A stretch of 63,551 bases of DNA, filler included, from Ministeria vibrans ATCC 50519 (taxonomy: Eukaryota; Protista; Filasterea), in the NCBI GenBank assembly GCA_943704425.1. It is 8 parts of 8 records of this genome, joined end to end, with 100 filler letters (N's around TTAATTAATTAA, not from the genome) between each part and the next. Parts side by side here need not be neighbours in the genome. Positions count along the whole stretch, not along the records: positions 1 to 15,603 come from CALSCP010001583.1; 7 more parts are not named here. One strand, written 5' to 3'. The position numbers and the translations under genes were made by a program. The notes under the pieces were generated by a model. That model saw only the letters and a program-made list of their open reading frames with translations, searched no databases and was not told the DNA's origin. Positions 1-15,647 of the stretch are shown one piece after another (position 1 is the first letter of the stretch; the number at the start of each line of letters is the position of its first letter).

Positions 1-72
1 CTAACCCTAACCCTAACCCTAACCCTAACCCTAACCCTAACCCTAACCCTAACCCTAACCCTAACCCTAACC
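1..72 (-). repeat. Telomeric repeat (CCCTAA)n/(TTAGGG)n, chromosome end 1
   Basis: Perfect CCCTAA tandem array at the start of the scaffold. Confidence 0.98.
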
Positions 73-874
73 GAGACATGAACTTTACGATTGTATTCAG
101 ACGTTTAACACATACTCAAGCAGCTTATGGGGCCCACTCGGAATACATCGCGATCCTCAACACACACATCAAACACAAAAACACACAAGAGGATACTACA
201 AGCAACACCAAAGAACAAATACCAAAACAACACACATAATATCAAAAACAAACAATCACAAACATTAACAAAACAACACAGTCACACACAAAAGTAATAA
301 AACGCGCCACACTAACAAACACAAGAGCAAACAAACAAACACAACGTGCTCAGCAGGCACTCAAAGCCACAAAGACTCATGTCAAAGCTTAAATGACTGA
401 ACCGCACCATCCAAACTCAAACTTCATCCATTGCACCCAAGAACACCCAACCAAACGCCACCACCATCGCCTTGGCCAGCCAAAACTGCCAATACCATGC
501 CAGCATCCACCGCCACAGACCCACCGTCCGACATTAGCAACAAACTCAGACTCTATCTGCCGCAACAGAAAATCTTCGTTTGGCCCACATCTCATACCAC
601 GTCACCATGTCTTTCACAACATTTGACGCCATCTTCTTCAGACGAACACGCTCACTCTCACTGAAACGCACCAGCACCGCTTGTGGCCACATTCCTGACA
701 CAAGAACCGATGGACGCATCACTTGAAACGGCACAAGCCACAGTGCAACCTGCGCGCTCGCACCATCCTGTGACGCATCCTTCAACCATTCTTGAAAGCC
801 TGCCTGTAGTACGCCCAGGGCGCGCTCTATACCACTAACCCCAGATGCAGTGCACGCAAACATGTGGTCCACAT
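73..874 (-). mobile_element. 5'-truncated non-LTR retrotransposon inserted in telomeric repeats (ORF2 C-terminus plus 3' UTR)
   Basis: Telomeric repeats on both sides. The minus-strand ORF (stop at 546) begins DVDHMFAC, the tail of a LINE CCHC knuckle. Bases 73-339 recur at 38592-38860 with an identical junction. Confidence 0.72.
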
Positions 875-923
875 CTAACCCTAACCCTGATCCAAATCCC
901 AAATCCCAACCCAAATCCTAACC
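875..923 (-). repeat. Internal degenerate telomeric repeats
   Basis: ctaaccctaaccctgatccaaatcccaaatcccaacccaaatcctaacc. Confidence 0.85.
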
Positions 924-1003
924 GTTCTCGTCTCGTTCACTCTCTTTGCACCACTAAAAGTGATAGTGATGACGATCAAACATACTACAATGAAAACTCA
1001 ACT

Positions 1004-2428
1004 CAACAGTTGTGAAATTTCACTCCCTCACTCAAAAATAAACTTTTGCCGTTTATCTCATATCTCATTTTTTTCTTTGCAAGCATATTGGAGGGAAGCG
1101 ACGACAAATCGGTCAGTCCCTTTGTCCGAAACAGTCTCTCTGCTCTCTCTTTCACTGTCCCTCCGCATTTTAGTCTCTTTTCCTACTCACAATGTTACCC
1201 ACTATCTCTATCTTATACTCACTTTTGATTATGTTCCCTTGCTTGCAACGAATAATTCGGGTCTTCCAGTGAAACACTCAATAGTGACTCGACCGACGGA
1301 AATTGTTCCAAGCCAATCGTTTTCCCTTCCACCTTTTTCACCTTTTCCTCTTCTTCCCTCTTCTCTTTCGTTCCCTCACTCTTCGTCTTAATTTGTCTCT
1401 CAGTCTTCGTCTCAATCTGTCCCTCACTCTTCGTCTCACTCTTCGTCTCAATCTGTGCCTCAGTCGTTTCCGTCTCAGTCACTCTCTTCTCTGCTTCTTT
1501 TTCTCCGTATTCCCTTTCCCGCTCATCTACTCTTCTCGCCTCTTCTTCTTCCTTTCCACACATTTCCTCATCGCTCTCACTCCCATCGTCTTCCTCTTCC
1601 TCCTCCTCCCACATTTTGCGCCGTTTCACTTTGATTGAGCCCACACCACTCGCATCCTCTCCACTCCGCTTCGTTCCTCCTCCTCCTCTTGCATCTCCCC
1701 TTGTTGTTGTTGTTGCCGCTGCTGCTTCTTCATGATTCCCTCGCGCAGAGCATCCGCATTCTTTTCCTCAATCTCTTCCAAGTCGCGCATGGCACTGCGA
1801 TGGTCAAACTGGTGTCGTGGCCCGGACAGGATCTTTTCGCGCATCTGCCGCTTCTGCAGCTCCGCCTCCTGGCGTTCCTTCTCCTTATGTCGAATAAAGT
1901 CAGCAACTCTAAGAAAAAAGAAAGAGAAAAAGAGAGAGACTGTCAACGACCTCTTGGCGCTCGAGTGGGATTTGTGATACTGTTTTTCAGCGTCTGACGA
2001 ACGCGTCGTCCCCTCAGATCCCGACACGCGTCGACGTTGTCGTCTTTGTTTCGCGAGAGCTTGGCGCCTGCAGACCGCAGCATGCTGCCAAAGCTGCCCT
2101 TGCCGCCGTAAAGACGCAGCGAGATGGTGATGGTCGAAAATGCCGACGACGTCACGTCTTGTGGGCTTCGCTGCTGTCGCTCCCGGCCTGAAGGCAGCCG
2201 TTCACGCGCACGACAGTCTTGCTTGCGTCAAGCCCGTACTCGCTGCAGACGAGCGCACACGCCTGGTGGATTGACAGAGAGAGAGACGGGGAAGGGGTTG
2301 GGGGGATGAGAAAGAGAGAACGATGTTTGGTGAATTGCTACAGTGTGCGCTGAGCATGATTCGACAACACGACAGGGTAGGCGTGCGAAGCACGAAATGG
2401 GAGGTCCACTGACGATAAACTGGGGCAT
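1004..2428 (-). pseudogene. SDE2: SDE2-like gene (ubiquitin-fold N-terminus, SAP-like C-terminus), frameshifted; 3' end approximate
   Basis: [14 protein letters not shown]...ACRDLRGRR and LQAR..LKCGGTVKERAERLF match SDE2 motifs. Apparent frameshifts at ~1997 and ~1728 indicate decay or sequencing error. Confidence 0.8.
1374..1455. repeat. Coding minisatellite (ETKSE/ETKTE units) in SDE2
   Basis: Repeated ctcactcttcgtct units. Confidence 0.7.
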
Positions 2429-2483
2429 TGTCGTTCGGTAAGAAGAGAAAAATAAACTGAAACTGAAACTGGGAGTATTCATT

Positions 2484-3460
2484 TCATCCAGCACCGGCCA
2501 CATCCTCTGCTGGACAACTCCCTGTTCGCGCATAGCGCGACATGTTGTCTTTCACAACCGCCATCATCTCCTCGCCGAACAACGACGTCGCCACATCCGT
2601 CACAAGACGGCGCACGCTATGCACAGCCGCCGCATGGCGACACGGATTCAGATGATCCGCATCTCCAATGTGGCCTGTCGCCCCATGGATGCCATCAACA
2701 AGCTCATCGTACTTCTCGACGTCCAAGACNNNNNNNNNNNNNNNNNNNNNNNNNNNNNNNNNNNNNNNNNNNNNNNNNNNNNNNNNNNNNNNNNNNNNNN
2801 NNNNNNNNNNNNNNNNNNNNNNNNNNNNNNNNNNNNNNNNNNNNNNNNNNNNNNNNNNNNNNNNNNNNNNNNNNNNNNNNNNNNNNNNNNNNNNNNNNNN
2901 NNNNNNNNNNNNNNNNNNNNNNNNNNNNNNNNNNNNNNNNNNNNNNNNNNNNNNNNNNNNNNNNNNNNNNNNNNNNNNNNNNNNNNNNNNNNNNNNNNNN
3001 NNNNNNNNNNNNNNNNNNNNNNNNNNNNNNNNNNNNNNNNNNNNNNNNNNNNNNNNNNNNNNNNNNNNNNNNNNNNNNNNNNNNNNNNNNNNNNNNNNNN
3101 NNNNNNNNNNNNNNNNNNNNNNNNNNNNNNNNNNNNNNNNNNNNNNNNNNNNNNNNNNNNNNNNNNNNNNNNNNNNNNNNNNNNNNNNNNNNNNNNNNNN
3201 NNNNNNNNNNNNNNNNNNNNNNNNNNNGAGCTTACGATGGGTTTGAATTGGCAGCGAGGGCAGATGTTCGCGTCGCTAAACTGGTCTGCGAGCTCAATGA
3301 ACTTGTGGCCTTCGAAGGGGGCGTTGCAGAAGACGAGGTTTTCGCTTTGAACCGGTTCGGAGGGACACGCCTCGGCATGCAGACACGCGAAGTACTGGTG
3401 CGCCTCGGTGGAGGCCAGGCACGCCGCGAGGAGGAGAGACAGAGCAACTGGACGATGCAT
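2484..3460 (-). CDS. Secreted Cys-containing hypothetical protein spanning an assembly gap
   Basis: Signal peptide MHRPVALSLLLAACLASTEA at 3460. A coding-like ORF at 2484-2726 after the gap is the likely C-terminus. Confidence 0.55.
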
Positions 3461-4632
3461 TTCTGAGAGAGAGAAGCGGCAAGGCAGAAAAAAAGAAGAA
3501 AAACAACAAAGCGAAAATAATTAGGCAAAAAAGTTGTTTGTGCTCATTGGATCCGTGTTCTTTTCAACTGAATCGTCACTCGTACCAATCACAAGCCAAA
3601 TTCAAGAATAAATTTGGAAAGTCCAAGTCTAATTGGCCCTCTCGGACCTTATGCAAATTTCGAATTTCAGACCGAATTCAGTCAGACAGGTGATTTCATT
3701 GAGCAAATGAGAGCCCATCTGTCAGAGTGGTCTGTGTCTCATGTGTTATGACCCCCTTGTCACAACGCGGAGCTTTTTGCGCCAGTCGTTTGTTTTCTGT
3801 GGTCTGGCACAATTATTGTTCAATTATTGATGACGTACTTCGACACTCTCAGCGTTATTTTTGTGTTTTGCTTAATTAAATATCGCACTGCATTCTGCAA
3901 TCAATCGATTGTTCGCTCTCCGTTGGAGGCAGGCGGGCACTCAGGCAGCAAACGAGCGTATCTTTTCCCAGCGCGGGCCGTCGCCCCTGGCCAGCCAAGG
4001 TCGACTACTTGTCGCGGGCATGGTCCATGGACAGACCATCGGAGTGCGCCGGACTCTGTCCCACTCCGGTTGTAACCAAAATCGGTTTGACCCTGCCTGG
4101 CCACTGCCCTTTATAATCTCGGATCTCGCCCCCTAAAAATCTCAGATTTTCTCACCGAGCTCGATCAGCCCATTAGTAAACTTATGGCGTTGATTACGCT
4201 CTGTTCCGGCCGTGCTTGACGTCCTCGCCGCGCACATGCCATACACCTCAGTAACAACAATGTTCGTCGTCGCGAATCTCGCCAGTTTATTTGCTAGTTT
4301 GGTCGTGGCGGCAGCAGGAAAAAACAAATCTCGCCAAAAACAGTGTCGTGTTTCAGTCTCTCCTCTTTGTCACCCATGTGTCTTTTTGAACTGTAAAGTG
4401 TACAATCATTGGAAGTGAGTGAAAGTTTCGAATTTTTCAAATTTCGAGTGAATCGCAATTTTTTATCACTTTTGGCGCGCTACTCTGTCCGTCGTTCCAC
4501 GCGACTAAGTCGCTTAGTCCCGATCCTTTAACGTTGCAGTAATAGTGTGGACACGTCTCATGTCAAAGAAATCGTCATTTTCATGTCCAGTACGTCGTTT
4601 GGAGGGAAACGAGGTTTGTTCTGCTTTACTCA

Positions 4633-5082
4633 TTGTACACAAAGGCGACGCCGACGATTCCGACTGCATCCGAGGTATCTCTCCCTCGTGGAATGAAGTT
4701 CATACCGACGTTTGGCTCGGGGTTCCTGCCCGTGTTCAGCCCGGTCCTGTTTTCGGGCATGGGCACGATTGCGAAACTGACCGAGTCGGCCGATGAGGTC
4801 AAAGACGCGCGCTCCCAGTTTGCTCGCGTAACCAAAGAAGGTTCTCTTACGGACGTCTGCACAGAGCTCGACAAGCCGTTGTCCGGCCGATCTGCGTCTA
4901 GAATTCTGAACAGAGGCCGCAGTGCTTGGGGTCGCGCACCTTACGAACGGTATGAGGACCGGCCGGCTATTCCGCTGGCGGAGGACCCGATGTCGCATAT
5001 GAACAGTTCCCGATACGTTTTACACACACTAAAGATATCGATGAAGCAGTTCCAAGAGCTGGTTGAGGCGGCGGCGCGGTAA
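4633..5082 (+). CDS. Hypothetical ORF inside the TIR element
   Basis: 149-aa ORF with no recognisable motif. Confidence 0.3.
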   Translation: MYTKATPTIPTASEVSLPRGMKFIPTFGSGFLPVFSPVLFSGMGTIAKLTESADEVKDARSQFARVTKEGSLTDVCTELDKPLSGRSASRILNRGRSAWGRAPYERYEDRPAIPLAEDPMSHMNSSRYVLHTLKISMKQFQELVEAAAR

Positions 5083-5201
5083 AAAAAATGCTACTTACCC
5101 TCCTCCCATCTCTCTCCCATTAACATTAATGATATTTTCGTAGATGTGACAATCGCATGCGCGGTCCTCGCGTCGGCCTGCTTCCTCCGACACGCGGTAA
5201 A

Positions 5202-5894
5202 TCAAAGTACACACTCGAAGAACGAGTGTACATTGGCCTTCACCATTTTCAGGGCCAAACTTATTCGCAGATGGTGGAGCACTTTCACACAAGTGTCTTC
5301 GCCGTTTCTAAATACGTCCACCTCACGATTCTTGCTGCCTCCTCGTTGAAATCGAAGTGTTGATTTCAATCGGAGGGCCCAAAGGTGTCGTTGGAGGCGT
5401 AATTGAGAGTGTGTTTGTTGTCGACGATTTGGCGCCCGAAGTCTTCGTCGCTGTTGACGTCGTAATGAAGGTGGTGTCAGACGCCCTGCGATGGGAACAA
5501 TGGGTGTCGTTGGGGGGGATGTGATTTGCACGGGAGAGACTGGAGGAGTCGTAGAAGTGTGGAGGAAGCCCTCCCCATCTGTTGGCGCCATAAGTTGAGA
5601 ATTCTCCTCTTCGTCCTCGTTCTCGTCCTCGTCTTCGCCCTCATCTTCGTCCTCGTCGTCCTCCGAGGCGACTACACTGCCACCATCACCATATTCGCGC
5701 TGATCCTTGTCGCAACCCTGGTCAGAGTCACCATCAAAGGAGAGCTCACGTTCGATTCCTTTGTCGAGGCGATCCTTCTTTGCCACCTCCTGAACAGCCA
5801 TCGTGAAAGCCGTTTCACCCCAAACGTCGCTCGGTAAACGCTTTAAGGTACGTGTGCGACCTCGAGCGCTGGTGTGGTGCATCAGTTTCTCCAT
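5202..5894 (-). CDS. Acidic/Pro-rich ORF inside the TIR element (possible transposase C-terminal remnant)
   Basis: 230-aa ORF with a D/E tract and a candidate splice acceptor (ctcag) just upstream. Confidence 0.35.
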   Translation of the reverse strand: MEKLMHHTSARGRTRTLKRLPSDVWGETAFTMAVQEVAKKDRLDKGIERELSFDGDSDQGCDKDQREYGDGGSVVASEDDEDEDEGEDEDENEDEEENSQLMAPTDGEGFLHTSTTPPVSPVQITSPPTTPIVPIAGRLTPPSLRRQQRRRLRAPNRRQQTHSQLRLQRHLWALRLKSTLRFQRGGSKNREVDVFRNGEDTCVKVLHHLRISLALKMVKANVHSFFECVL

Positions 5895-6700
5895 TCTGAG
5901 AGAAAACCGATATTACTCGAACATTAATCAAAACACAGATACAAATGCCACCAAACCCTGAACAGCATCTCCAATATTGAGTCTATCAAGCTACAGCCAC
6001 CTTGATATTTACCTCAGGGGTCGCAAAGGTGGTGTACTGCTCGAAAATTAATTGAGACTTCATTGAGATTATAACATCTTCACGCAACTGAATTTTCAAA
6101 AAGTGAGATACAAATTGAGATTATAAAGGGCAGCATGGGCGTTGGGAAGTGCCAGATCTCGCCCAGCGTGCCGATATTCTTGATCTGTTTCGCGCTCAGT
6201 CAAATGATCTCAGGTGCTCTCAGCTTCTGCTATAAAATCCCGTTTTCGTCAAGCAAGAAACGGAAGAACCACCGCCCGACGCAACTCTCCGCATTTTTCT
6301 CTTTCTGCGCGATCCCACTATCCGTATGGGGAGCAGTCGTTGCCTATCCCAAGGCAGACTCCCTTGCGCAAGGCCTCGGCTGTCCGACGCAGACAGGCAT
6401 AGTCGCTCTCGTGTGTGTCTCTATTGTTATTTGTCTCGTGTCTCTTATGCACTTGTTTGCCTTTTTCAAAATTGTATATCGCTGTCTGAATAAATAGAAG
6501 AAGAGAATACCATTATTAATAATACAGTCACCGCGCGAAGACACAGCCAGATCGCCTTGCAAACCCAACCAAAACTTTAGAGGTAACATGGGGGGGCTAC
6601 CCTAGTGTGCTAGCCCCCAACATCGGAGAACAGTTGCAGGTCAGAGTGCTGTATCGTCGCTATTCAGGGAGGCAATCGCGAAAATATTGTTCTGCTAGGA

Positions 6701-6845
6701 AGGAGTGCCCGGACTCCCTATAACATGTCCCACCCCACGGAAATTCGGAGTTTTCTAATACCAGGTCCCAGGGGAGTGCCTCGGACTCCCTATTAAACAT
6801 GTCCCACCCCACGGAAATTCGGACTTTTCTAATACCAGGTCCCCC
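6701..6845. repeat. Tandem ~70-bp direct repeat (2 copies)
   Basis: ggagtgcc..ggactccctat..acatgtcccaccccacggaaattcgga..ttctaataccaggtcccc appears twice. Confidence 0.9.
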
Positions 6846-7084
6846 AGGTCAAAATTTCTAATTTCCGACAAAGCAGACTTTTCTGAATACGATGATTAGA
6901 GGACAGATGACGCCTATTATGGTGATCTTCATACGTTTGCTAGGTCACTGGGGGGATAGAAGACGTTTTAACTTTTAACTATGAAAATATTATTATTATT
7001 AGAAGAAGAAGAAGAAGAATACAACCCATTTATTATAATTATTAGTATTCTCCTCATATTAGTCTTGCTAAGTTGTTGTCGTCG

Positions 7085-9369
7085 TTAACGAAAGTACACG
7101 TCAATCTGACGAGGAGAGTCTTGGAGCGATTTAAATATGGGCTTGTGGAAGGGTAGGGAGTTGAGAATCTGTGTCACCGTTTTGGCTCGGAACAGGCTCT
7201 CAAGGCGTTTTGTGAAGAGAGTGGCGAGAGTGGCGTCGGACATTTTTGGGTAGCGACACGTTCGAGACATGCAGACCGTGGTTAGGTCAAATTCAAAAGA
7301 TATGATTTGTATTTGGCCTTCGGAAGGATTAAGCTGGTTGAGGGCGGGGTGGAGAGCTGTAAGAACATTGTCATAATTCTGCATCTGGACTTTGTAGCCT
7401 TGCCCATCGTTAACCGTAATTTCGATACAGGACTTGATAATGGCTTTAACGTCTCCAATTGTATTGGTCGCCTCGATGCTAGCAAGGCGATGGAATCGCG
7501 CGACAAACGCCAGACCCCTGTTAGGAAAGCACCCGACAGGCTCGACCTTACTGGTGAGCTTCAAACAATCTTGCCATCGTGAAGACGCCCAACAACCCCA
7601 ATCCTCGCAGTCATAGAGTAATGCGCGATCCGCAAGCGTCTCAAGAACGCTTTTTACCGCACGCTCGAGATCAAAGAACGCTTTGTTTGCTTGTAATTGA
7701 CGGTCTCGTTCCATTTCGCCCTTTTCGTCTTTCCAAGTAAAATGCTCTCCCAACATACAAAGTTTCACAAAGACCGTTTGTGTTCCTTCGGAATTAAAAT
7801 GTCCTGAGTTCCACAGATCGTCCATCATAGCGGTAAGAGATTTCATGAGGTCAAGACTTGTCTCGTAATCAGCGAATTTGTCGTTAGATTTCGAAAATTG
7901 ATAAAGAAGTGGGATCTTCTGGAGGAGAGAAATTCCATCTGCTATACTGTGTGACTTGAAATTAAGGTTCCCGCGAACAACATATTTAGGGTTAAATGTG
8001 TACCCACGAATCGCGCGAGGATAGGTCGACAAGTCGGTAAGGGAAAGGTTGATCCACAGAGATGTTCCCGAGCAACTGTACATAGCATCATAAGCGTTCT
8101 GCCAGATAACAATTCCCACTTCCCGCTTCGCCAAATGCTTCAAACAGATCACCAGCGCGAGCAACGCGTTTTCCAACCATTGACGGTTAGAGATATTATC
8201 TAATGTGATTCGCGATAAGGAAAGTGTGTTTTTCGGTCCCTTTCTGAGAATAGGGTTTCTCAAAATTAGCTTATTAAATAGCTCTTCGGAATGAATAGTC
8301 AGGTCATAGTCCGAATTCTCATACGGCATAAAATGGTCTTCTTTTTGAATCCAGGAGAAACCTTGAATGGTACTTCCTTGGATAGACATCGAAATAGGGT
8401 GAAGTGTATCTGTAGTGGTGGAATCAGAAAGGAACTTCCGAACGATAGAGCAAAACTTGTTGAGTGACTTTTCACTTCTCAAAATTCCGAAGCAAGGAAG
8501 AAGCGTCTTTTGAACGTGTTGTCCCAATCCGAGAGCTTTAGTTTTCTCTTCCTCGGTAAGAAAGCTCTTGTCAAAGCTCTCGGCAACCATAGTCCCTCTA
8601 CGAGTCAGACATAAAGACGTAAAGAATAAGTATGAACCTAAAGATGCGTTCAAATTGTGATACATTACCTAATCTGTTGAAGAAGTGTAAAGACCCACCG
8701 CAAGGTATCGTTGTCCACAAGCCTCCAAATTTGAGACATTTGGTTTGGTGAACACGACTGAGTGGTCGTCAAGTCACGTGACATAGTCTCAACCCTGTTA
8801 AAGTACTGGCTGATCAAAGTAGTATCGCTCCAGTCGACAGGGGGAGTACAGGTATTATCAAGTTGCTCTTTCAGAGACAAGATGCACCACAAAAGAGACA
8901 AAAACGCGTTCGTGCTGTTTGGGCCCGATTTCTGACAACAGATTCGAAACATATCCCGCAAAATTTGGTACCCATCTTCACGGGATTCCTTCCTGATCAC
9001 ACGAACATTAGAACTGTCCCCAAGATCAAAATCAGTTATTGCCGCACTATTACAATAAGATAAGTAAACGTGTCCCTGGCCGATAAGTTCGAACAGTTGT
9101 GTGAGCGTAGTTTTGTTCAAGGTCCAGGTCGAGAAGGAGAGACCGCGTTTGGGTCCATCGGTATCAGTTCCATGGCCACAAAACCACATTGTGTAATACT
9201 GTTTGCCGAGATGTTCAATGTACCTTACCAAATATTCGTAAGTAGGATCATACAACACGACTGGGTTGTTGTCCTCGGAGCCAATTAATTCAAGTTTAAA
9301 AAGAGCCAAATCGAATTCAGCGAAAGGCGGTCCGCCGCCCCGATTAAAATTGTAGCACAGAATCGACAT
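7085..9369 (-). CDS. Caspase/CHAT-like protease fused to a Pol-beta-superfamily nucleotidyltransferase and an uncharacterised C-terminal region (~737 aa, exons 9369-8669 and 8597-7085)
   Basis: WFCGHG (H66) and YLSYCNS (C106) form a clan CD dyad. IQGSTIQGFS...SDYDLTI is a GS..DxD NTase motif. A 71-nt GTAATG...CTGACTCGTAG intron (8598-8668) joins the two ORFs in frame. Confidence 0.78.
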
Positions 9370-10133
9370 TCTTTCTCAAGAAGTATGTCACCTGTAATTA
9401 AAAATAATGCAGAATTTGGAAGAATATCAAACAATGATACAAAGATTGATAAGAAAGGAAAATTAATAGAGAACACATTTCCAATTTATTATCAATCACA
9501 AACGAAAAGCGAGAACAATAATAGAGAATAGAGGGTGGGTTAAGTTTTCGTTTTTTTTTCTTCTCTCGTCGCTACGCAAAAAAGGAAGGAAGCGTACAGC
9601 GAGTAAAGGAATCGGTGTACCTCACATTTCACAGACACATTGAAGACACATTACGGTCGTTTAGTCTCCTTCAAAAATTCGAGAAGGGAATCTCTTCATT
9701 TATTTGGAGGCTCCACAACACATCAATCGACCAACAGTAGGTGTTACCCCACTGTTTATTCACTGAGGAGACAATGCCGACGAATTATAAGCGCGGGTAC
9801 AGGGTTGAAGAAAAGTAAAGAGTCGCAAAAAAAAAATGCTTACAATGCTCTCACAGACGAGTTACACGCAACAGTAGAGAAAACTCAGTCATCTTACGTC
9901 GCTACCAAGCGCAATCGGTGACGTACTCTTCAAAACGCAGCTCTGGCAACTCTGCTGTACTGCCTATACGAACCAAGACTGTTTATTTGATTTAATACTG
10001 GGTTTATTTTGATAAAGGGACGTTAGATAATAGATATAACAATATAACTCAATGTAAGAAAATTTGTAGATATTTACACTCGATATTCGGGACAAAACGA
10101 ATCAGTTTCAGAAAAAATTGATCTGGATAAATA

Positions 10134-10500
10134 GAACGAGACGGACAGTTCGAGCCGAACTGATCGCTTTGGCCTGCTCACGAAGCACCCTCGCACGTCT
10201 CAGAACTTCGTCAAGCACCTCTGCAACGAGCACGACTTCACCAAAGAGGATGGTGCCGCCTGAGGAGGACGAGGCGCCTAGAGCGACAGAGAATCGCACT
10301 CGACCCAACTATTTCTTGTTCGTGGCGAGGCGGCGGACACTACGAAAGACCAGGAAGAGGATGAGGACGAGGACGAAGAAGAGGATGATGAACAGGACGA
10401 AGAAGAGAAGCAGGACGAGAAGCAGCAAGAAGAAAGCGACGAAGTACTCCGTAATTGCGCACTACTTCGGAGGTGTCGTCAAATACTTGCTATGTGTTGA
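10134..10500 (+). pseudogene. Possible decayed BED-finger/transposase N-terminal fragment
   Basis: One frame reads TSQNFVKHLCNEH, followed by an acidic tract. The frame is broken. Confidence 0.25.
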
Positions 10501-11069
10501 ATACATGCTATATATTTGAAAAGCGCCCTGCGACGCGCCCCTTCATGATCAGTCATTTTTCTTTCCCTGGACGTGTGTATCGTGACCATATCTAGGTGTC
10601 CATGGAGGCAGATCAGTCGGTAGGCGCGTCACTGTGGATCGTGGTTCGACGACCGTTGATTGTTTCGCGCGCAATTGTTCGCTTAATTTCTTTGGAACTA
10701 TGTATCTCGGTCAAATGTTGTCGTTTCATCTACTTAGTCTAAAGTCTGCACTTCCAGACTAACGCCTCTCCGTGACGCAACGAAGTGACCCTCAGTCTGT
10801 CCCGGTTCGATAAATTCGAATTCCGGACTTTGACCTGGTACCTCGTTAATATTTAAATCCGGATATCAAAAAAAGTCGCTCTAGGGGCTCGAAATGGCCT
10901 TGATTTAGCACCTAATACCGGAGATGACGACACAGTGGTCTCCGCGCGAAGAACAGGGGTTAAAAAGTGCTCAAAATCGAAGAAAAAAAATGAAATGAAC
11001 GAAAATTCTGAAACTCTTCACTTTCATACGATGATTTTTCATCGTATATCTCTCAAGTCTCACGTTGGA

Positions 11070-14000
11070 TCATTGGAAAAGATCGTCGTCAAGGTGCTCA
11101 ACAAACTCATTGTCCTCCTGCACTTGCGCATACAACAGGGCCGCCCGTATGCCAGCGGTTGATCGCCGGCTCCCGAGTGCCTTGGCCGCCTGGCAGGCCG
11201 GAGGCAGGCGGAGGTACTGCGCCGGAGTCGTCTGGCTGGCAGCCAGCGCCACCTTCGACTGACTCAGGTGCTGGAGACTGCGTGGGCGGTTGACGTGGAG
11301 CATTTGCCGGTACCCCGCGTCGCATGCGTCGCCGATCATCTTCGAGAATGCCACAGACAGATTGCACGGCGTCGCCCTTGACACGATCCAACTCCTCGCT
11401 CGTCAGCTGCGTGCCCCCTGAAATCCAGTTGGCAGGTACAGCCTTGCACACGGTGATAACGGCCGACAGAGTGATCTTTGGGCGCCCGACCACCGTGCGA
11501 TCCACGCGGTGCTGGCGCGCCAATTTTCACAGTGTCCTCTCCACTCGTCTCAATCGCGTGAGACCGCCACATAAGTGCCCTCTCGAGATCTGTTTTGTCC
11601 AGCGCCACACTGCCCTCGGCGAGCTCCGTGTCGAGGTATCCTGACATCTCCCTGTAGGCAATCATCACGGCCTCCCTCGTCGTCGTACCCGCGTCCAGTG
11701 ACACACGCGTCAACGCTCACCGATTTTACCGAGCGTCGGCCGGCCTCTTCCGCTCCACCTGCATTGATGCCTTTCTTTGTCATGTGCACGACTGTCCCGA
11801 AGCCAATGCGAAACGTTTTCGCGCCTGTTGCCCGCGCCGCGGCGTCGCTCTCAACGTCAAACAAAATCGCAATGACGCTTCCCAGACGCAAAACGTTGGT
11901 TTGCGAGCGCGCGAGTACACGCAGCTCCGCCCGCACCCGCGAGAGTCGGTCCGCTGATGAGTGAGTGGACACCTTCTCGCTGAGCGCACGGTGGAAATCT
12001 GCACACCATTGCATCTTCAGCGGCCCTTTCTTGTCATTCTCGAAGAGAAGATAGGCACTGTCGTCGCGTTCAGTGCAGCCTGGGTCAGCCGCATCTCCCT
12101 CCGGCGCGTCAAAGTCCACCGAGCCGCGTGCCCCAGCTCGCCCACCCACTAAACATTGAGCCGTCTCCATGCCTGTCAGCAATGACATCACGTCGATTCG
12201 ATTGTCCTGGGACGTGTGCAGGTGTGTCGCGTCGGGCACGTTGGCATCGGCCGTCGGCGTCTGGCTGTACAACGCGTCAAGGTCGTCGCCGAGCACACCA
12301 TCGTCATCGTCGTCGTCATCGTCGTCGTCATAGGCGTTGGCGGCGGTGTCGCCCGCTTCTTCGGCACCGTCGCCTTCTTCCGGCGCTTGAGCTCCGAGAG
12401 CGAGCGCAATCACAACCGGTTGGCCCAACGTCTGGTCATCACGCATTGTGCGCAGATGCACCGCCAGCTGCTGCACATCGCCGCCGAGACAACTGCGAGC
12501 AAGCAGTCGCCCATGTTGACATCCAGCAGCAAAGCCGTAGTTGAGTTCGGCGACAAGGGAGGCGACAAAGTCGTTGTTCCACTCGCGCAGTGCCGTAATG
12601 AGGCCAGGCATCGACTCACTCGACTCCCATTCTCGCGCTGGCCACCAGTCGCCACAGACTGCACTACACAGCCGATCCCACTCAAACTGCCGTCCGCTGT
12701 TGCGACCTCGCTGCACAAACAGCTCCACAGCTCCGAGATGCCCTTCAACGTCGTACTGGCGCCCAAGCGAGGACATGAGTGCCGACAACACGTTCAGCGC
12801 GTCCCTACCGGTCACATCCGACGAGTTGCGATGGCCAACGCGAATGTGGCGGAATGTGTGCTCCACTGGGTCACTGCAGAGCTGACGATCCGCGTCGATG
12901 AACAAAATGGCGTCGGCACCGCAGCAAAGAGCCAAATGTACAAGTGCTGCCGCAAAAGAGCCGACGCAACGCAGCATGTCATCGAGCGTCTGCGCAGTGT
13001 AGAAACTGGGGCCGGGTCGACGAGCTGCTCGAAGCTTCGTCAGACTACCCCACACAAGGCCGCACCGCCAAAGTCGACCACGAACGCTCAGTTTGCGACT
13101 GGCAAACGCATCAACAAAAAAGCAGTGAATGGCGACCATCGTTAGCGTGCCGCACAACGGCACACCCTGTAGGAAGGCGCCCGATGAATCCGCTGCGTCA
13201 ATCAGCGCGCCGAGCAGCGCCGGAGAGGCACGTACAAGCGCACGCGTGACTGACTGGCGATCGCCGTGCAGGGGCAGCGCCTCGCGCGTGACCACGCTCG
13301 GGAACATTGCCAAGATGGCAGGACACACGGGTTGGTCACCAAAGTAGATGAGTTTCGACGAGTCGAACATGCAGGACGCGCGCTTGATCACGTGTCGCCA
13401 GTCCTGTCGATGAACGAGGCCAAGAACAACGGCCACAGGATCGACACGCGCGCCAAAGAGGCCGTTGCAGTGCGGAACGAGACGGGCCACTTGTTCGACT
13501 TGAAGCGCAACAGTGTCGTGCGCAACGCCGACCCCGCCGTCCGACCGTCGCTCGTCATGCCACGCTCGCAAGCGCTTCTGGCAATCATCGACGGTGTGCT
13601 TGATCAAGCGGCCGCGCAGCTGAATCTGCGTCTTGGACACGGCCACGCAGCGTGCATCGCCGTCGGTGTGCACGCCCTGCACAATGATGTTCGGCACCGA
13701 CAGTTGCAGCAGGTGTCGAATGCGCTCGGCGAGGTGCCGATGCGCATCCGCATCAAAGTTGTTGGCCGAGAAGACGGCAAAGAGCGGAATGGGGCTCGTC
13801 AAGCGCTGGGTGTGCAGTTGTGGGTGAAATACAACGGGCTGCACGGTGACGAGTGTGAGGTGAGTTGAGAAACCCCACCCGGACGAAAAATCGCCCGCTG
13901 TGTCGTCGACGGCCAGCACCTCATCGCGCAGGCGTTCCGCAGCTTCCACCGTCTCCGGTATGCCAATATGCACACCAAGATCACCGTAGTTTGGAGATCC

Positions 14001-15126
14001 GGCATTCTTGCCGACGGCGTCCGCTTGCGCACTGACGAGGACGTACCGAGCACCGTTCACGCGGATTGTGTACGGCTGAACGCTCGGACGCAGGTTCGTT
14101 TGGTCGATCGCGATGCTGTAGGGCACCAGCAACTCGCTGCCGCCTAGCTTGGCGGCCACCTTGGCTGCCTGCTGGAGCACAATCGGCGCAATCATCCTCA
14201 TATGTTGCTCGCCAACGCCAGGGATGACCTAATGTAGCAGAAGATTGTTAGTCTGTTGGTATTTTGGGTGCACTTTTGTGCACTGCAAGACCATGTTTAC
14301 CTTCACGCTCGCAAATTTCTTTCGGTAACGCTCGATTGTCGGCAGACTGATGTTGGCGATAAACGTGCGCACCATGGTGAGGCCGAGGCGGGGGCCTGCG
14401 AGCTCAACAATCTGGGCCGCCGTCGCTTGAACGAGAGCAGGGTAGAGCCACCCTTGAGGGCGCTTGCCAGAGTGGTTATCGATCATCTCCAGCAGTAACG
14501 TGAGCTATTCCCGCTTCCGCTCCCGATCGCCGCGCTCACCGTCTGTGCCAGGCTCAGCGACACGGATTTGATGACGCATCATCGCCCGCGCCTTTCTCTT
14601 CCTGGAATTCGCACGCTCCTTGGGTGCCGCATCTTCCCATCGACGCTGGCCTTGAACTTCTTGAAATGCTGCAGCAGGTTTGACTTGACTTTGGCAAACA
14701 GCCCCGTGTTGTTGTTCGACTTGTTCGCAAATGTGAGGAGCCGATTGCACTCGGCGCACGTGGTGCGTGAGGAACTGGAGAGCTTCGTGCGGTCGACGTG
14801 GCCCAGACAGTGTGGATGGCGTAGGTACTCGCGAGCGTACACCTTGTCGTGCCAGTCTTGCAAGCCATCAGTGTTGACATGCAGTGTGAACAAGCTGGTT
14901 TTGTCGCGCGCTGCGAAAGCAACCGGGCTCAGAGTGTCTGTCGTGGCGAGGTGCTCAGCGAGAAACCCGTGCAGCTCAGAGTTCTTGGGCTCCTTTGCGG
15001 CCACCTGGGCCAATGAGATACCGAGGCAACGCCACTTCTCCGGTGGCCGCCGCGGTGGCGGCAGTGGCGTTGCTGTCGCTCCGCCCGCTCCGCCGCCACC
15101 TCCTGTTGCTGCTGGTGCTGTTGTTG

Positions 15127-15180
<54 letters not shown>

Positions 15181-15574
15181 TTGTTGTTGTTGTTGTTGTT
15201 ATTGTAGTCGTTGTTGCTGCTGCTGCCATCGGTGCGGCCGTCTCCTGCTTGAAGTAGCTGGCAAACTGGCGCTGACGCTCCTTGAGCTCAGGAGTCATCT
15301 GTGTTTTGTCACCAACAGTACCCATCTTCTTGTGCTGGGAGTGACAATGTGAGACAATGGAGCCGAGGACGAGAGTCTGTCGCCGAGAATCTCGTCGAGC
15401 GGAGAATGGGTGACGGCACAGTCCGCACTGAATGACGATTGTGTTGTCGGAGAAGGTCGTGATATACAGACGCTTGGGCAGCGACAACGGAGCAATCGTC
15501 TTGGCGAGGAGCTTGTCAAACTCCGCTCGCTCTGCGGCTGTCGATGGTGCAGATTCGTCGCCCGACGACTCCAC
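11070..15574 (-). mobile_element. P-element-superfamily DDE transposase, inactivated
   Basis: IAIDQT, HTDGD, DWRHVIK (DxxH), DRQSV and SDPVEHTF..IR motifs. N-terminal Zn fingers (CGLC..H..H; CAEC..H). Intron 14229-14300. Frameshift at ~14637, in-frame TAG at 14505-14507, and further frame switches below 11710. Confidence 0.8.
15107..15225. repeat. (GCT)n/(GTT)n trinucleotide repeats (poly-Ala/poly-Thr in the transposase)
   Basis: Directly visible in the sequence. Confidence 0.9.
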
Positions 15575-15647
15575 GTCGAAAATCGTCGGCTTGTCGGGGG
15601 CCGNNNNNNNNNNNNNNNNNNNNNNNNNNNNNNNNNNNNNNNNNNNN

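What the first reader, a model, noticed from the sequence alone, without database searches (positions are those of the whole stretch)
7085..9369. Single-chain caspase-like protease and nucleotidyltransferase fusion: candidate undescribed immune/cell-death or toxin module
Seen: the two ORFs that touch at 8665 are joined in frame by a 71-nt intron (AG|GTAATG...CTGAC.TCGTAG|A), giving ~737 aa. The N-terminal part has FAEFD..L, LYDPT, WFCGHG and YLSYCNS. The middle has QGSTIQGFS..F...SDYDLTIHSEELF..LRKG..T..L...REVGIVIW. About 330 aa of largely helical-looking sequence follows. Known: His-Gly plus a Cys ~40 aa later is the clan CD (caspase/metacaspase/CHAT) dyad, and GS-x(n)-DxD plus a third acidic strand is the Pol-beta NTase fold shared by cGAS/CD-NTase, OAS and MNT toxins. 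From memory, and unverified, this NTase motif spacing resembles C-terminal toxin domains of bacterial Rhs proteins. Inference: the protein either makes a nucleotide signal that switches on its own protease, or the protease releases a nucleotidylating toxin. I know of no described eukaryotic protein with this architecture. The gene is intron-poor, visibly AT-richer than neighbouring host genes, subtelomeric and surrounded by transposon debris.
Basis: partly seen in the sequence, partly recalled or inferred. Interest (0 to 1): 0.9.

Follow-up and report, generated by a model that had tools for sequence, protein, structure and literature searches.

The report
Expressed orphan gene, enzyme domains unproven
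This is a real, transcribed and correctly spliced gene near a chromosome end that encodes a 737-residue protein with no detectable relatives anywhere; its caspase-like and nucleotidyltransferase-like motifs are present, but no statistical or structural test could confirm either fold.

Summary
Two minus-strand ORFs (9369..8669 and 8597..7088) are joined in frame by a 71-nt GT..AG intron. Transcript-like contigs from two studies carry exactly that joint, while a DNA run carries the unspliced form. Two more introns lie in the 5' UTR. The gene is single-copy, 7-9 kb from a (CCCTAA)n telomere, and AT-richer than sampled host ORFs (GC 0.45 against 0.58).

The interpretation could not be verified. 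Pfam, NCBIfam, PADLOC, PHROGs and PDB sequences gave nothing. An exhaustive HMMER search of 1.84 billion representatives (exon 1), three word-index searches, and viral, metagenome, bacterial, phage and plasmid scans also gave nothing real. Single-sequence AlphaFold models were unusable (pLDDT 36-38).

However, they score no better than shuffles once the motifs are held fixed. The only independent lead is that protein-language-model neighbours of exon 1 are Peptidase_C14 clusters.

Verdict: a genuine expressed orphan. The caspase-like N-terminal domain is plausible (about 0.4) and the NTase weaker (about 0.3). The signalling or toxin mechanism is speculation.

The parts
8669..9369 (-). Coding exon 1. 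The ATG is at 9369-9367. It holds 233 codons plus the first 2 bases of a split Arg codon. An in-frame TGA at 9378-9376 in the same exon fixes the start.
8598..8668 (-). Coding intron, 71 nt, GTAATG...CTGAC...TCGTAG. It is removed in the transcript contigs.
   Evidence: (X1 record 3 and X3 record 10 skip 8598-8668; X5 record 16 has a loose end matching 8672-8679; the X6 DNA contig is unspliced)
7085..8597 (-). Coding exon 2: last base of the split codon, 503 codons and the TAA stop at 7087-7085.
7029..7084 (-). Minimum 3' UTR covered by transcript contigs. The true end is hidden by a GAA-repeat that the read tool skipped.
9370..9391 (-). 5' UTR part of the start-codon exon.
9392..9620 (-). 5' UTR intron, 229 nt, GT..AG. 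It contains the 48-nt dispersed repeat.
   Evidence: (X3 record 10)
9621..9762 (-). 5' UTR exon, non-coding, with short upstream ORFs.
9763..9843 (-). 5' UTR intron, 81 nt, GTAAGC..CAG.
9844..9925 (-). First 5' UTR exon seen. The transcript contig runs about 25 nt past 9900, and the true start was not determined.
9046..9198 (-). Candidate clan-CD core, residues 58-108. It holds a hydrophobic strand plus CGHG (H66, codon 9174-9172), then GLSFS and a helix-like LTQLFELI, then a hydrophobic strand plus YCNS (C106, codon 9054-9052).
   Evidence: Motif level only; not significant.
8294..8395 (-). Candidate NTase core, exon-2 residues 68-101 (full-length 302-335). It holds ISMSIQGS, a 20-residue gap, then SDYDLTIH.
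   Evidence: Motif level only.
8102..8128 (-). Candidate third acidic strand KREVGIVIW (E159, full-length E393). A greedy hhalign alignment places it on the 'vDl' strand of bacterial minimal NTases.
   Evidence: P about 0.1, not significant
1..72 (.). Telomere repeat (CCCTAA)n at the contig start, which places the gene 7-9.4 kb from a chromosome end.

Best explanation
Shown (confidence about 0.9): this is a genuine, single-copy, nuclear protein-coding gene of an unidentified heterotrophic eukaryote.
- It is transcribed and has three spliceosomal introns, two in the 5' UTR and one in the coding region.
- It encodes one soluble 737-aa chain with no signal peptide, membrane segment, P-loop or internal repeat.
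- It lies in an AT-richer island 7-9 kb from a telomere.
- It has no detectable relative in its own genome or in any public collection searched.

Inferred (the confidence figure refers to this part): it is a fast-evolving, conflict-type protein.
- Its first ~125-230 residues would form a very divergent clan-CD (caspase-like) His66/Cys106 peptidase domain.
- The following ~170 residues may be a minimal Pol-beta-type nucleotidyltransferase, but this is weaker.
- The closest architectural precedent is the bacterial caspase-like 'releasing' peptidase that sits directly upstream of a toxin or effector domain. By that analogy the protease would act in cis or on a partner, gated by or releasing the C-terminal 500 residues.
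- Both the folds and the mechanism are inferred from short motifs and one language-model lead. They are not demonstrated.
For: Gene model and expression.

Uniqueness:
- No paralogue in the genome.
- No real hit among 1.84 billion representatives for exon 1. The one hit is a repeat artefact.
- No word-index hits.
- No loci in metagenome, viral or bacterial contigs, in phages or plasmids, or in 401 bacterial genomes.

Location and composition.

Caspase-like reading:
- The H-G and C residues each follow a hydrophobic strand and lie 40 residues apart, a pattern seen in 0.3% of exon-1 shuffles.
- The nearest ESM-feature clusters for exon 1 are Peptidase_C14-bearing clusters of 234-241 aa (score 0.91, recognition 2420, 17 of 30 hits).
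- A greedy hhalign alignment to the genome's own C14-like family is colinear on GHG, GL.S, CNS and IW. The local best hit is the Cys strand.

NTase reading:
- The best local match to a bacterial MNT profile is exactly the SDYDL strand, and 28/1000 shuffles do as well.
- The greedy alignment is colinear on helix, GS, DxD and third acidic strand.
- One NTP_transf_2 cluster appears among the ESM neighbours at 0.87.

Precedent for a caspase-like peptidase upstream of an effector domain: PMC3482391. Caspase and Pol-beta NTase as interchangeable effector domains: PMC8195603.
Against: - No curated profile matches either part, even at E<=10: Pfam, NCBIfam, PADLOC, PHROGs. The Peptidase_C14 model finds nine other loci in this genome but not this one.
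- Against a 29-sequence profile of the in-genome family, exon 1 scores -1.3 bits (19/300 shuffles do as well) and hhalign gives P about 0.1 (31/200 shuffles). With the two motifs held fixed, 78/500 and 54/150 shuffles do as well, so there is no signal beyond the motifs.
- The NTase test gives the same outcome: 232/1000 anchored shuffles do as well.
- The GS-to-DxD gap is 20 residues, not 9-13, and the residue before G is Gln.
- Only about 65 residues precede His66, which is short for the usual beta1-alpha1-beta2-alpha2-beta3 of caspases.
- The ESM hits share only 118-119 of 256 features, a range typical of chance or distant relatives.
- The AlphaFold models are unusable (pLDDT 36 and 38) and their fold searches return noise.
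- No sensor, secretion, immunity or target component was found nearby.
Confidence: 0.33

Rival explanations
1. It is an orphan protein with other, possibly new, folds. The GHG...C and GS...DxD strings are chance matches and the protein is neither a clan-CD peptidase nor an NTase. Its function is then unrelated to proteolysis or nucleotidyl transfer, for example a structural, regulatory or recognition protein of a subtelomeric, fast-evolving class.
For: Every significance test failed. With motifs anchored, the real sequence sits in the middle of the shuffle distribution. The motif definitions are post hoc and the scan is very large. The NTase spacing is atypical. The low-confidence model of exon 1 is all-helical after residue 130.
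Against: Its agreement with the ESM-feature neighbours (Peptidase_C14 in 17 of 30 hits, all ten best named hits in one clan) is unlikely if both were random, although both may be keying on the same short motif. Two separate family profiles each align three or four motifs in the right order.
Confidence: 0.37
2. One reading: both domains are active in one chain. Either the NTase makes a nucleotide second messenger that switches on the protease in the same chain, or the protease releases a nucleotidylating toxin.
For: Both motif sets are present and colinear with family profiles. The single chain is confirmed. Bacterial precedents exist for caspase-like releasing peptidases upstream of toxin domains (PMC3482391) and for caspase and NTase effector domains in conflict systems (PMC8195603).
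Against: It needs both unproven folds to be right. No ligand-sensor domain of the kind that couples nucleotide signals to effectors was detected (PADLOC). There is no secretion signal and no hydrophobic segment. There is no neighbouring immunity-like gene with a recognisable domain. There is no similarity to Rhs or other toxin families.
Confidence: 0.12
3. It is a foreign or mobile-element origin gene, acquired from an unsampled virus or organism or carried as cargo of a subtelomeric mobile element, and since domesticated. This concerns origin and is compatible with any of the functional readings.
For: GC is 0.45 and GC3 0.50, against 0.58 and 0.63 for host ORFs. The gene sits in an AT-richer island of about 5-7 kb. 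It is flanked by, and its 5' UTR intron contains, short high-copy dispersed repeats. It has no paralogues.
Against: No viral, plasmid, phage, bacterial or metagenomic relative was found. It has three canonical spliceosomal introns and is transcribed. No terminal inverted repeats, target-site duplications, transposase or integrase were found.
Confidence: 0.15

Closest known systems
Clan CD cysteine peptidases (caspase, metacaspase, orthocaspase; Pfam PF00656 Peptidase_C14)
   Same: His-Gly and Cys each follow a hydrophobic strand and lie 40 residues apart. There is a Gly-rich acidic loop after the His and a helix-like segment before the Cys strand. The ESM-feature neighbours are C14 clusters of the same length.
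   Different: No profile match at any threshold. No similarity beyond the two motifs. The N-terminal part before the His is about 25 residues shorter than usual. The fold is unverified.
This genome's own >=60-copy family of ~290-aa caspase-like ORFs (alignment A1; best PDB relative metacaspase-4, 6w8s, E 0.0066)
   Same: Very similar catalytic strings: LIGHG..GGLLLSD and CDFCNSGAL in the family, against FCGHG..RGLSFS and LSYCNSAAI in exon 1. The greedy alignment is colinear, including a C-terminal (R)IW.
   Different: The window's gene is not retrieved by a family member at E<=0.1. hmmsearch gives -1.3 bits and hhalign P is 0.1-0.15, no better than shuffles. The family ORFs are GC-rich and appear to start with a hydrophobic segment. 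This gene is AT-richer, has no such segment and carries 500 extra residues.
Minimal Pol-beta nucleotidyltransferases (MNT, Pfam PF01909), and by extension OAS, cGAS and CD-NTase cores
   Same: Helix, then a strand ending in G-S, then S-D-x-D-hydrophobic strand, then a later acidic strand, all in the family order. The best local profile match is the DxD strand.
   Different: The GS-to-DxD gap is 20 residues against 9-13, and Gln precedes the Gly. No profile match. Nothing beyond the motifs. No HEPN partner motif. The fold is unverified.
Bacterial polymorphic and host-directed toxins with an internal caspase-like releasing peptidase upstream of a C-terminal toxin domain (PMC3482391)
   Same: The domain order, if the assignments are right: peptidase first, effector after it, in one chain.
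   Different: No secretion or trafficking domain, no RHS or filament repeats, no adjacent immunity gene, eukaryotic with introns, and no sequence similarity.

Membership tests
Clan CD / Peptidase_C14 (caspase-like) | Significant match to a family profile (PF00656 or related clan CD models) | tested here: not met
   hmmscan found no hit at E<=10 for exon 1 or for its first 134 aa. The PF00656 scan of the whole genome finds 9 loci but not this one.
Clan CD / Peptidase_C14 (caspase-like) | Catalytic His-Gly and Cys, each at the end of a hydrophobic strand, 30-60 residues apart | tested here: met
   TMWFCGHG (H66) and HVYLSYCNS (C106), 40 residues apart. The pattern occurs in 0.3% of exon-1 shuffles. 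It was defined post hoc.
Clan CD / Peptidase_C14 (caspase-like) | Sequence similarity beyond the two catalytic motifs | tested here: not met
   With the motifs held fixed, 78/500 (hmmsearch) and 54/150 (hhalign) shuffles score at least as well.
Clan CD / Peptidase_C14 (caspase-like) | Caspase-hemoglobinase alpha/beta fold | tested here: inconclusive
   The single-sequence AlphaFold2 model has pLDDT 36. Foldseek against the PDB gives TM<=0.23, which is noise. ESM-feature neighbours are C14 clusters, a lead only.
Clan CD / Peptidase_C14 (caspase-like) | Peptidase activity dependent on the dyad | not testable with these tools
   Needs recombinant protein and H66A/C106A mutants.
In-genome ~290-aa caspase-like family (A1) | Retrieved by a family member or family profile | tested here: not met
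   Not among 66 matches at E<=0.1. hmmsearch gives -1.3 bits. hhalign P is 0.098 and 0.15. Shuffles: 19/300 and 31/200.
Pol-beta nucleotidyltransferase superfamily (MNT PF01909; CD-NTase, OAS, cGAS) | Significant match to a family profile | tested here: not met
   Pfam, NCBIfam and PADLOC gave no hit, including for the 123-aa and 211-aa sub-regions. A purpose-built MNT profile gives 0.9 bits.
Pol-beta nucleotidyltransferase superfamily (MNT PF01909; CD-NTase, OAS, cGAS) | Signature hG[GS]x9-13Dh[DE]h | tested here: not met
   G74-S75 and D96-Y-D98-L are present, but the gap is 20 residues and Gln precedes the Gly. The strict pattern does not match.
Pol-beta nucleotidyltransferase superfamily (MNT PF01909; CD-NTase, OAS, cGAS) | Third catalytic carboxylate on a following beta-strand | tested here: inconclusive
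   A greedy hhalign alignment places E159 (REVGIVIW) on the MNT 'vDl' strand, at P about 0.1. D133 is an alternative candidate.
Pol-beta nucleotidyltransferase superfamily (MNT PF01909; CD-NTase, OAS, cGAS) | Similarity beyond the motifs, and the NTase fold | tested here: inconclusive
   232/1000 anchored shuffles score at least as well. The model has pLDDT 38. Foldseek returns noise.
Rhs / polymorphic toxin | RHS or other trafficking repeats, a secretion domain, a C-terminal toxin family and an adjacent immunity gene | tested here: not met
   No Pfam or NCBIfam domain in the protein or its neighbours. No tblastn match in plasmids or phages. No signal or hydrophobic segment.
Nucleotide-signal-activated protease systems (CBASS or type III CRISPR style) | A recognisable cyclase together with a ligand-sensor domain fused to, or next to, the protease | tested here: not met
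   PADLOC gave no hit for any part. Neighbouring ORFs have no domain.

The most novel reading that the evidence does not exclude
A eukaryotic single-chain protein that joins a highly divergent caspase-like protease to a Pol-beta-type nucleotidyltransferase and a further ~330-residue domain. It would found a family with no detectable relative among about 15 billion predicted proteins, and would work as a self-contained cell-death, defence or toxin module at a chromosome end.
Probability: 0.12. Interest if true: 0.8.

Novelty: new variant of a known kind. Interest (0 to 1): 0.4.

Why it matters
If the two folds are real, this would be a eukaryotic example of an architecture otherwise known only from bacterial conflict systems: a protease directly upstream of an effector enzyme. 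It would sit in a fast-evolving subtelomeric setting and be divergent enough to escape every profile library. That would bear on how far immune and cell-death modules are shared between bacteria and eukaryotes, and on how much of that repertoire current annotation misses.

If the folds are not real, it remains a well-documented case of a long, expressed, spliced orphan gene. That is useful for studying how such genes arise, but it is not in itself surprising. As things stand, it is a candidate worth one good structure prediction, not a finding.

Tried and rejected
- Profile libraries: Pfam, NCBIfam, PADLOC and PHROGs on both exons and on sub-regions gave nothing meaningful.
- PDB sequence search: only chance-level hits. 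These were GFP-like proteins, Vps75, and APOBEC3F at E 1.1 whose zinc ligands are absent here.
- Exhaustive HMMER search of exon 1: the single hit, P0001 (7,048 aa), is an artefact. A 30-bit, 43-residue match is repeated over 58 near-identical repeats.
- Word-index searches of exon 2, of exon 2 residues 30-240 and of exon 1: none found.
- The search for related loci in metagenome, viral and bacterial contigs: none.
- tblastn against phages and plasmids: none.
- Exact-product look-ups: not on record.
- In-genome paralogue: the only weak hit, L002, is low-complexity noise.
- Six-frame HMMER over 401 bacterial genomes. Exon 1 gave 13 hits at E<=0.05, where about 20 are expected by chance. Three of them are orthologous RsmD-type methyltransferases. 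Exon 2 gave none.
- Single-sequence AlphaFold2 for each exon (pLDDT 36 and 38) and Foldseek on those models: noise. This is uninformative, not negative.
- Flanking acidic-tract ORFs as inverted duplicates: rejected, low-complexity only.
- Dispersed repeats as RNA genes: no Rfam match and no stable fold.
- The joined 737-aa sequence was never assembled or submitted.
Full report
**1. What is in the sequence**

Two minus-strand ORFs touch at 8665: 8665..9369 (234 aa) and 7085..8665 (526 aa). Read on the minus strand, the sequence around the junction is ...ATT AG|GTAATG...CTGAC TCGTAG|A GGG ACT ATG.... That gives an intron at 8668..8598 (71 nt) with a canonical donor, a branch-like CTGAC and a YAG acceptor. 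Removing it joins the frames: 233 codons, one split Arg codon and 503 codons, 737 aa in all.

In exon 1 they include H66 in WFCGHG and C106 in YLSYCNS. In exon 2 they are G74/S75, D96/D98 and E159 (add 234 for full-length numbering).

Everything below was done per exon, by reference: window:8668-9369:- and window:7088-8596:-.

**2. Expression and splicing**

Seven public runs from three studies hold the stretch. I laid contigs of four runs on 6600-9900.
- X1 (record 3) and X3 (record 10) skip exactly 8598-8668, with CT..AC on the plus strand, which is GT..AG on the gene's strand.
- An X5 contig stops at the joint, and its 8 loose letters equal 8672-8679.
- X6, a DNA run, has a colinear 2,490-nt contig that contains the intron.
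- The 2,539-nt X3 contig also skips 9392-9620 (229 nt) and 9763-9843 (81 nt), both GT..AG. The 5' UTR therefore has two introns.
- An in-frame TGA at 9378-9376 lies in the same exon as the ATG at 9369, so the start codon is fixed.

All contigs match the window without mismatches. The single-chain prediction is therefore supported. The runs are labelled only as 'RNA?'. The evidence that they are RNA is the intron-less joints themselves, together with their absence from the DNA run.

**3. Setting**

- The contig begins with (CCCTAA)n at 1-72, so the gene lies 7-9.4 kb from a chromosome end.
- Its GC is 0.45 and its GC3 0.50. For 82 long open frames on other contigs the values are 0.579+-0.027 and 0.634+-0.049. 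The profile shows an AT-richer island from about 6,000 to 11,000.
- The host is a ~29.7-Mb heterotrophic eukaryote that I cannot name. It has no light-harvesting proteins and only two Zn2Cys6 hits, so it is not a typical higher fungus.
- None of the neighbouring ORFs has a Pfam domain.
- 'Transposon debris' is an overstatement. What exists is a 48-nt element inside the 5' UTR intron with at least 40 near-identical copies, a 61-nt element downstream of the gene with at least 25 copies, and a GC-rich 883-aa neighbouring ORF that belongs to a small multi-copy family.

**4. Relatives**

None were found.
- No paralogue of either exon in the genome. The one weak hit is low-complexity noise.
- An exhaustive phmmer search of exon 1 against 1.84 billion representatives returned one protein, which is an artefact. 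A 30-bit, 43-residue match is multiplied over 58 identical repeats of a 7,048-aa protein.
- Three word-index searches gave nothing: exon 2, exon 2 residues 30-240, and exon 1 at E<=10.
- Scans of metagenome, viral and bacterial contigs, tblastn against phages and plasmids, and six-frame HMMER over 401 bacterial genomes gave nothing real. In the last search, the only recurring hit was an RsmD-type methyltransferase seen in three related genomes.

**5. Testing the caspase reading**

No curated profile matches. The Peptidase_C14 model finds nine other loci in this genome but not this gene.

One of those loci led to an unexpected resource: a family of at least 60 copies of ~290-aa caspase-like ORFs. 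Its catalytic strings, LIGHG..GGLLLSD and CDFCNSGAL, look much like exon 1's FCGHG..RGLSFS and LSYCNSAAI. The family itself is only distantly caspase-like (best PDB hit metacaspase-4, E 0.0066).

I built a 29-sequence profile of this family and tested exon 1 against it.
- hmmsearch --max gives -1.3 bits.
- hhalign gives a colinear 196-column alignment that places GHG, GL.S, CNS and a C-terminal IW correctly, but with P = 0.098.
- The tool's own hhalign finds only the Cys strand, P = 0.15.
- 19/300 and 31/200 plain shuffles score at least as well.
- With CGHG and YCNS held in place and everything else shuffled, 78/500 and 54/150 shuffles do as well.

So there is no measurable similarity beyond the two short motifs.

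The one independent lead comes from protein-language-model features. They place exon 1 next to Peptidase_C14-bearing bacterial and viral clusters of 234-241 aa (score 0.91, recognition 2420, 17 of 30 hits, all ten best named hits in one clan). The tool's own caveats apply: only 118-119 shared features, and similar scores arise for 4-10% of shuffled proteins.

**6. Testing the NTase reading**

Again no curated profile matches, even for 123-aa and 211-aa sub-regions. I fetched 24 bacterial minimal NTases (PF01909) and built a profile.
- Its best local match in exon 2 residues 30-240 is exactly the SDYDL strand (0.9 bits). 28/1000 plain shuffles reach that score.
- With QGS and SDYDL held fixed, 232/1000 shuffles do as well.
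- The greedy hhalign alignment is colinear: N-terminal helix, GS, a 10-residue insertion, DxD, and E159 on the third acidic strand. P is about 0.1.
- The classical signature is not met. The GS-to-DxD gap is 20 residues rather than 9-13, and Gln precedes the Gly.
- The ESM neighbours of exon 2 are unnamed ~165-aa bacterial proteins, with one NTP_transf_2 cluster at 0.87 and low recognition.

**7. Structure**

Single-sequence AlphaFold2 failed for both exons (mean pLDDT 36.4 and 37.8). Foldseek on those models returns noise (TM<=0.25). This says nothing about the folds. The test simply could not be run properly.

**8. Chance**

Loosely defined versions of the two motif pairs occur in 0.3% (exon 1) to 1.1% (whole-length composition) and in 1.8% of shuffles. 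The definitions are post hoc and the scan covers a very large number of ORFs. Co-occurrence alone is therefore expected now and then.

**9. Conclusion**

Firmly shown: a real, expressed, spliced, single-copy, subtelomeric, compositionally atypical gene that encodes one 737-aa soluble protein without detectable relatives.

Not shown: either fold.

My estimates are about 0.4 for a caspase-like N-terminal domain (motifs plus the language-model lead), about 0.3 for an NTase core, and about 0.12-0.15 for both together.

If the assignments hold, the nearest architectural precedent is the bacterial caspase-like releasing peptidase placed directly upstream of a toxin or effector domain (PMC3482391). 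Caspase and Pol-beta NTase domains also occur as interchangeable effector modules in bacterial conflict systems (PMC8195603). None of the accessory features of those systems is present here: no trafficking repeats, secretion signal, sensor domain or immunity gene.

The decisive step is cheap: an alignment-free structure prediction of the three segments followed by a fold search.

Noticed in passing
G000, many contigs (e.g. L017-L046; L005:1306-2259:-): A family of at least 60 copies (66 matches) of ~280-310-aa Peptidase_C14-like ORFs at 35-52% identity. GHG and DFCNSG are invariant. Many copies lie at contig ends and several carry stop codons. The frames seen appear to begin with a hydrophobic segment. 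The best PDB relative is metacaspase-4, at only E 0.0066. This is a large lineage-specific expansion of divergent caspase-like proteins.
   Followed up: partly
window 9470-9517: A 48-nt element inside the gene's 229-nt 5' UTR intron has at least 40 copies at 92-98% identity on other contigs. All four sequencing runs show loose ends at both of its borders. There is no Rfam match and no stable fold on either strand. Its nature is unknown: a very short dispersed repeat or a conserved intronic or regulatory element.
   Followed up: partly
window 6619-6679 and 6722-6843: A ~61-nt element downstream of the gene has at least 25 copies at 84-95% identity. Next to it is a 48-nt direct repeat (6722-6769 and 6796-6843, 98% identical) whose ~94-nt unit has two other copies. 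One RNA-like contig over 6772-6829 has very high depth (1334). No Rfam match.
   Followed up: partly
window 11550-14201 (-): A GC-rich 883-aa ORF without any Pfam domain belongs to a small multi-copy family: 9 matches, with paralogues at 41-53% identity in open frames of 1082 and 1131 aa, some near contig ends. It could be a subtelomeric gene family or an unrecognised mobile-element protein.
   Followed up: partly
window 8992-9227: One low-depth X1 contig joins 8991 to 9228, skipping 236 nt (GT..AG on the gene strand, only 28 letters on one side). If real, this minor isoform removes residues ~48-126, including H66 and C106, and shifts the frame. It may be an assembly artefact.
   Followed up: no
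window ~870-925: Degenerate interstitial telomere-like repeats (ctaaccctaaccctga..., then cccaaatccc-type units) lie about 0.9 kb inside the true telomere. This suggests past telomere healing or subtelomeric rearrangement.
   Followed up: no
window 1-15603: No ORF of 100 aa or more tested on this 15.6-kb chromosome-end contig has a Pfam domain. An assembly gap of N lies at 2730-3226. A long CAG/CAA-type triplet tract lies at 15060-15244.
   Followed up: no
P0001 (public protein, 7,048 aa): This giant protein is made of near-identical ~107-aa repeats. It produced a spurious E = 3e-59 against exon 1 by summing 58 copies of a 30-bit match. It is a reminder that whole-sequence E-values against repeat proteins can mislead.
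   Followed up: yes
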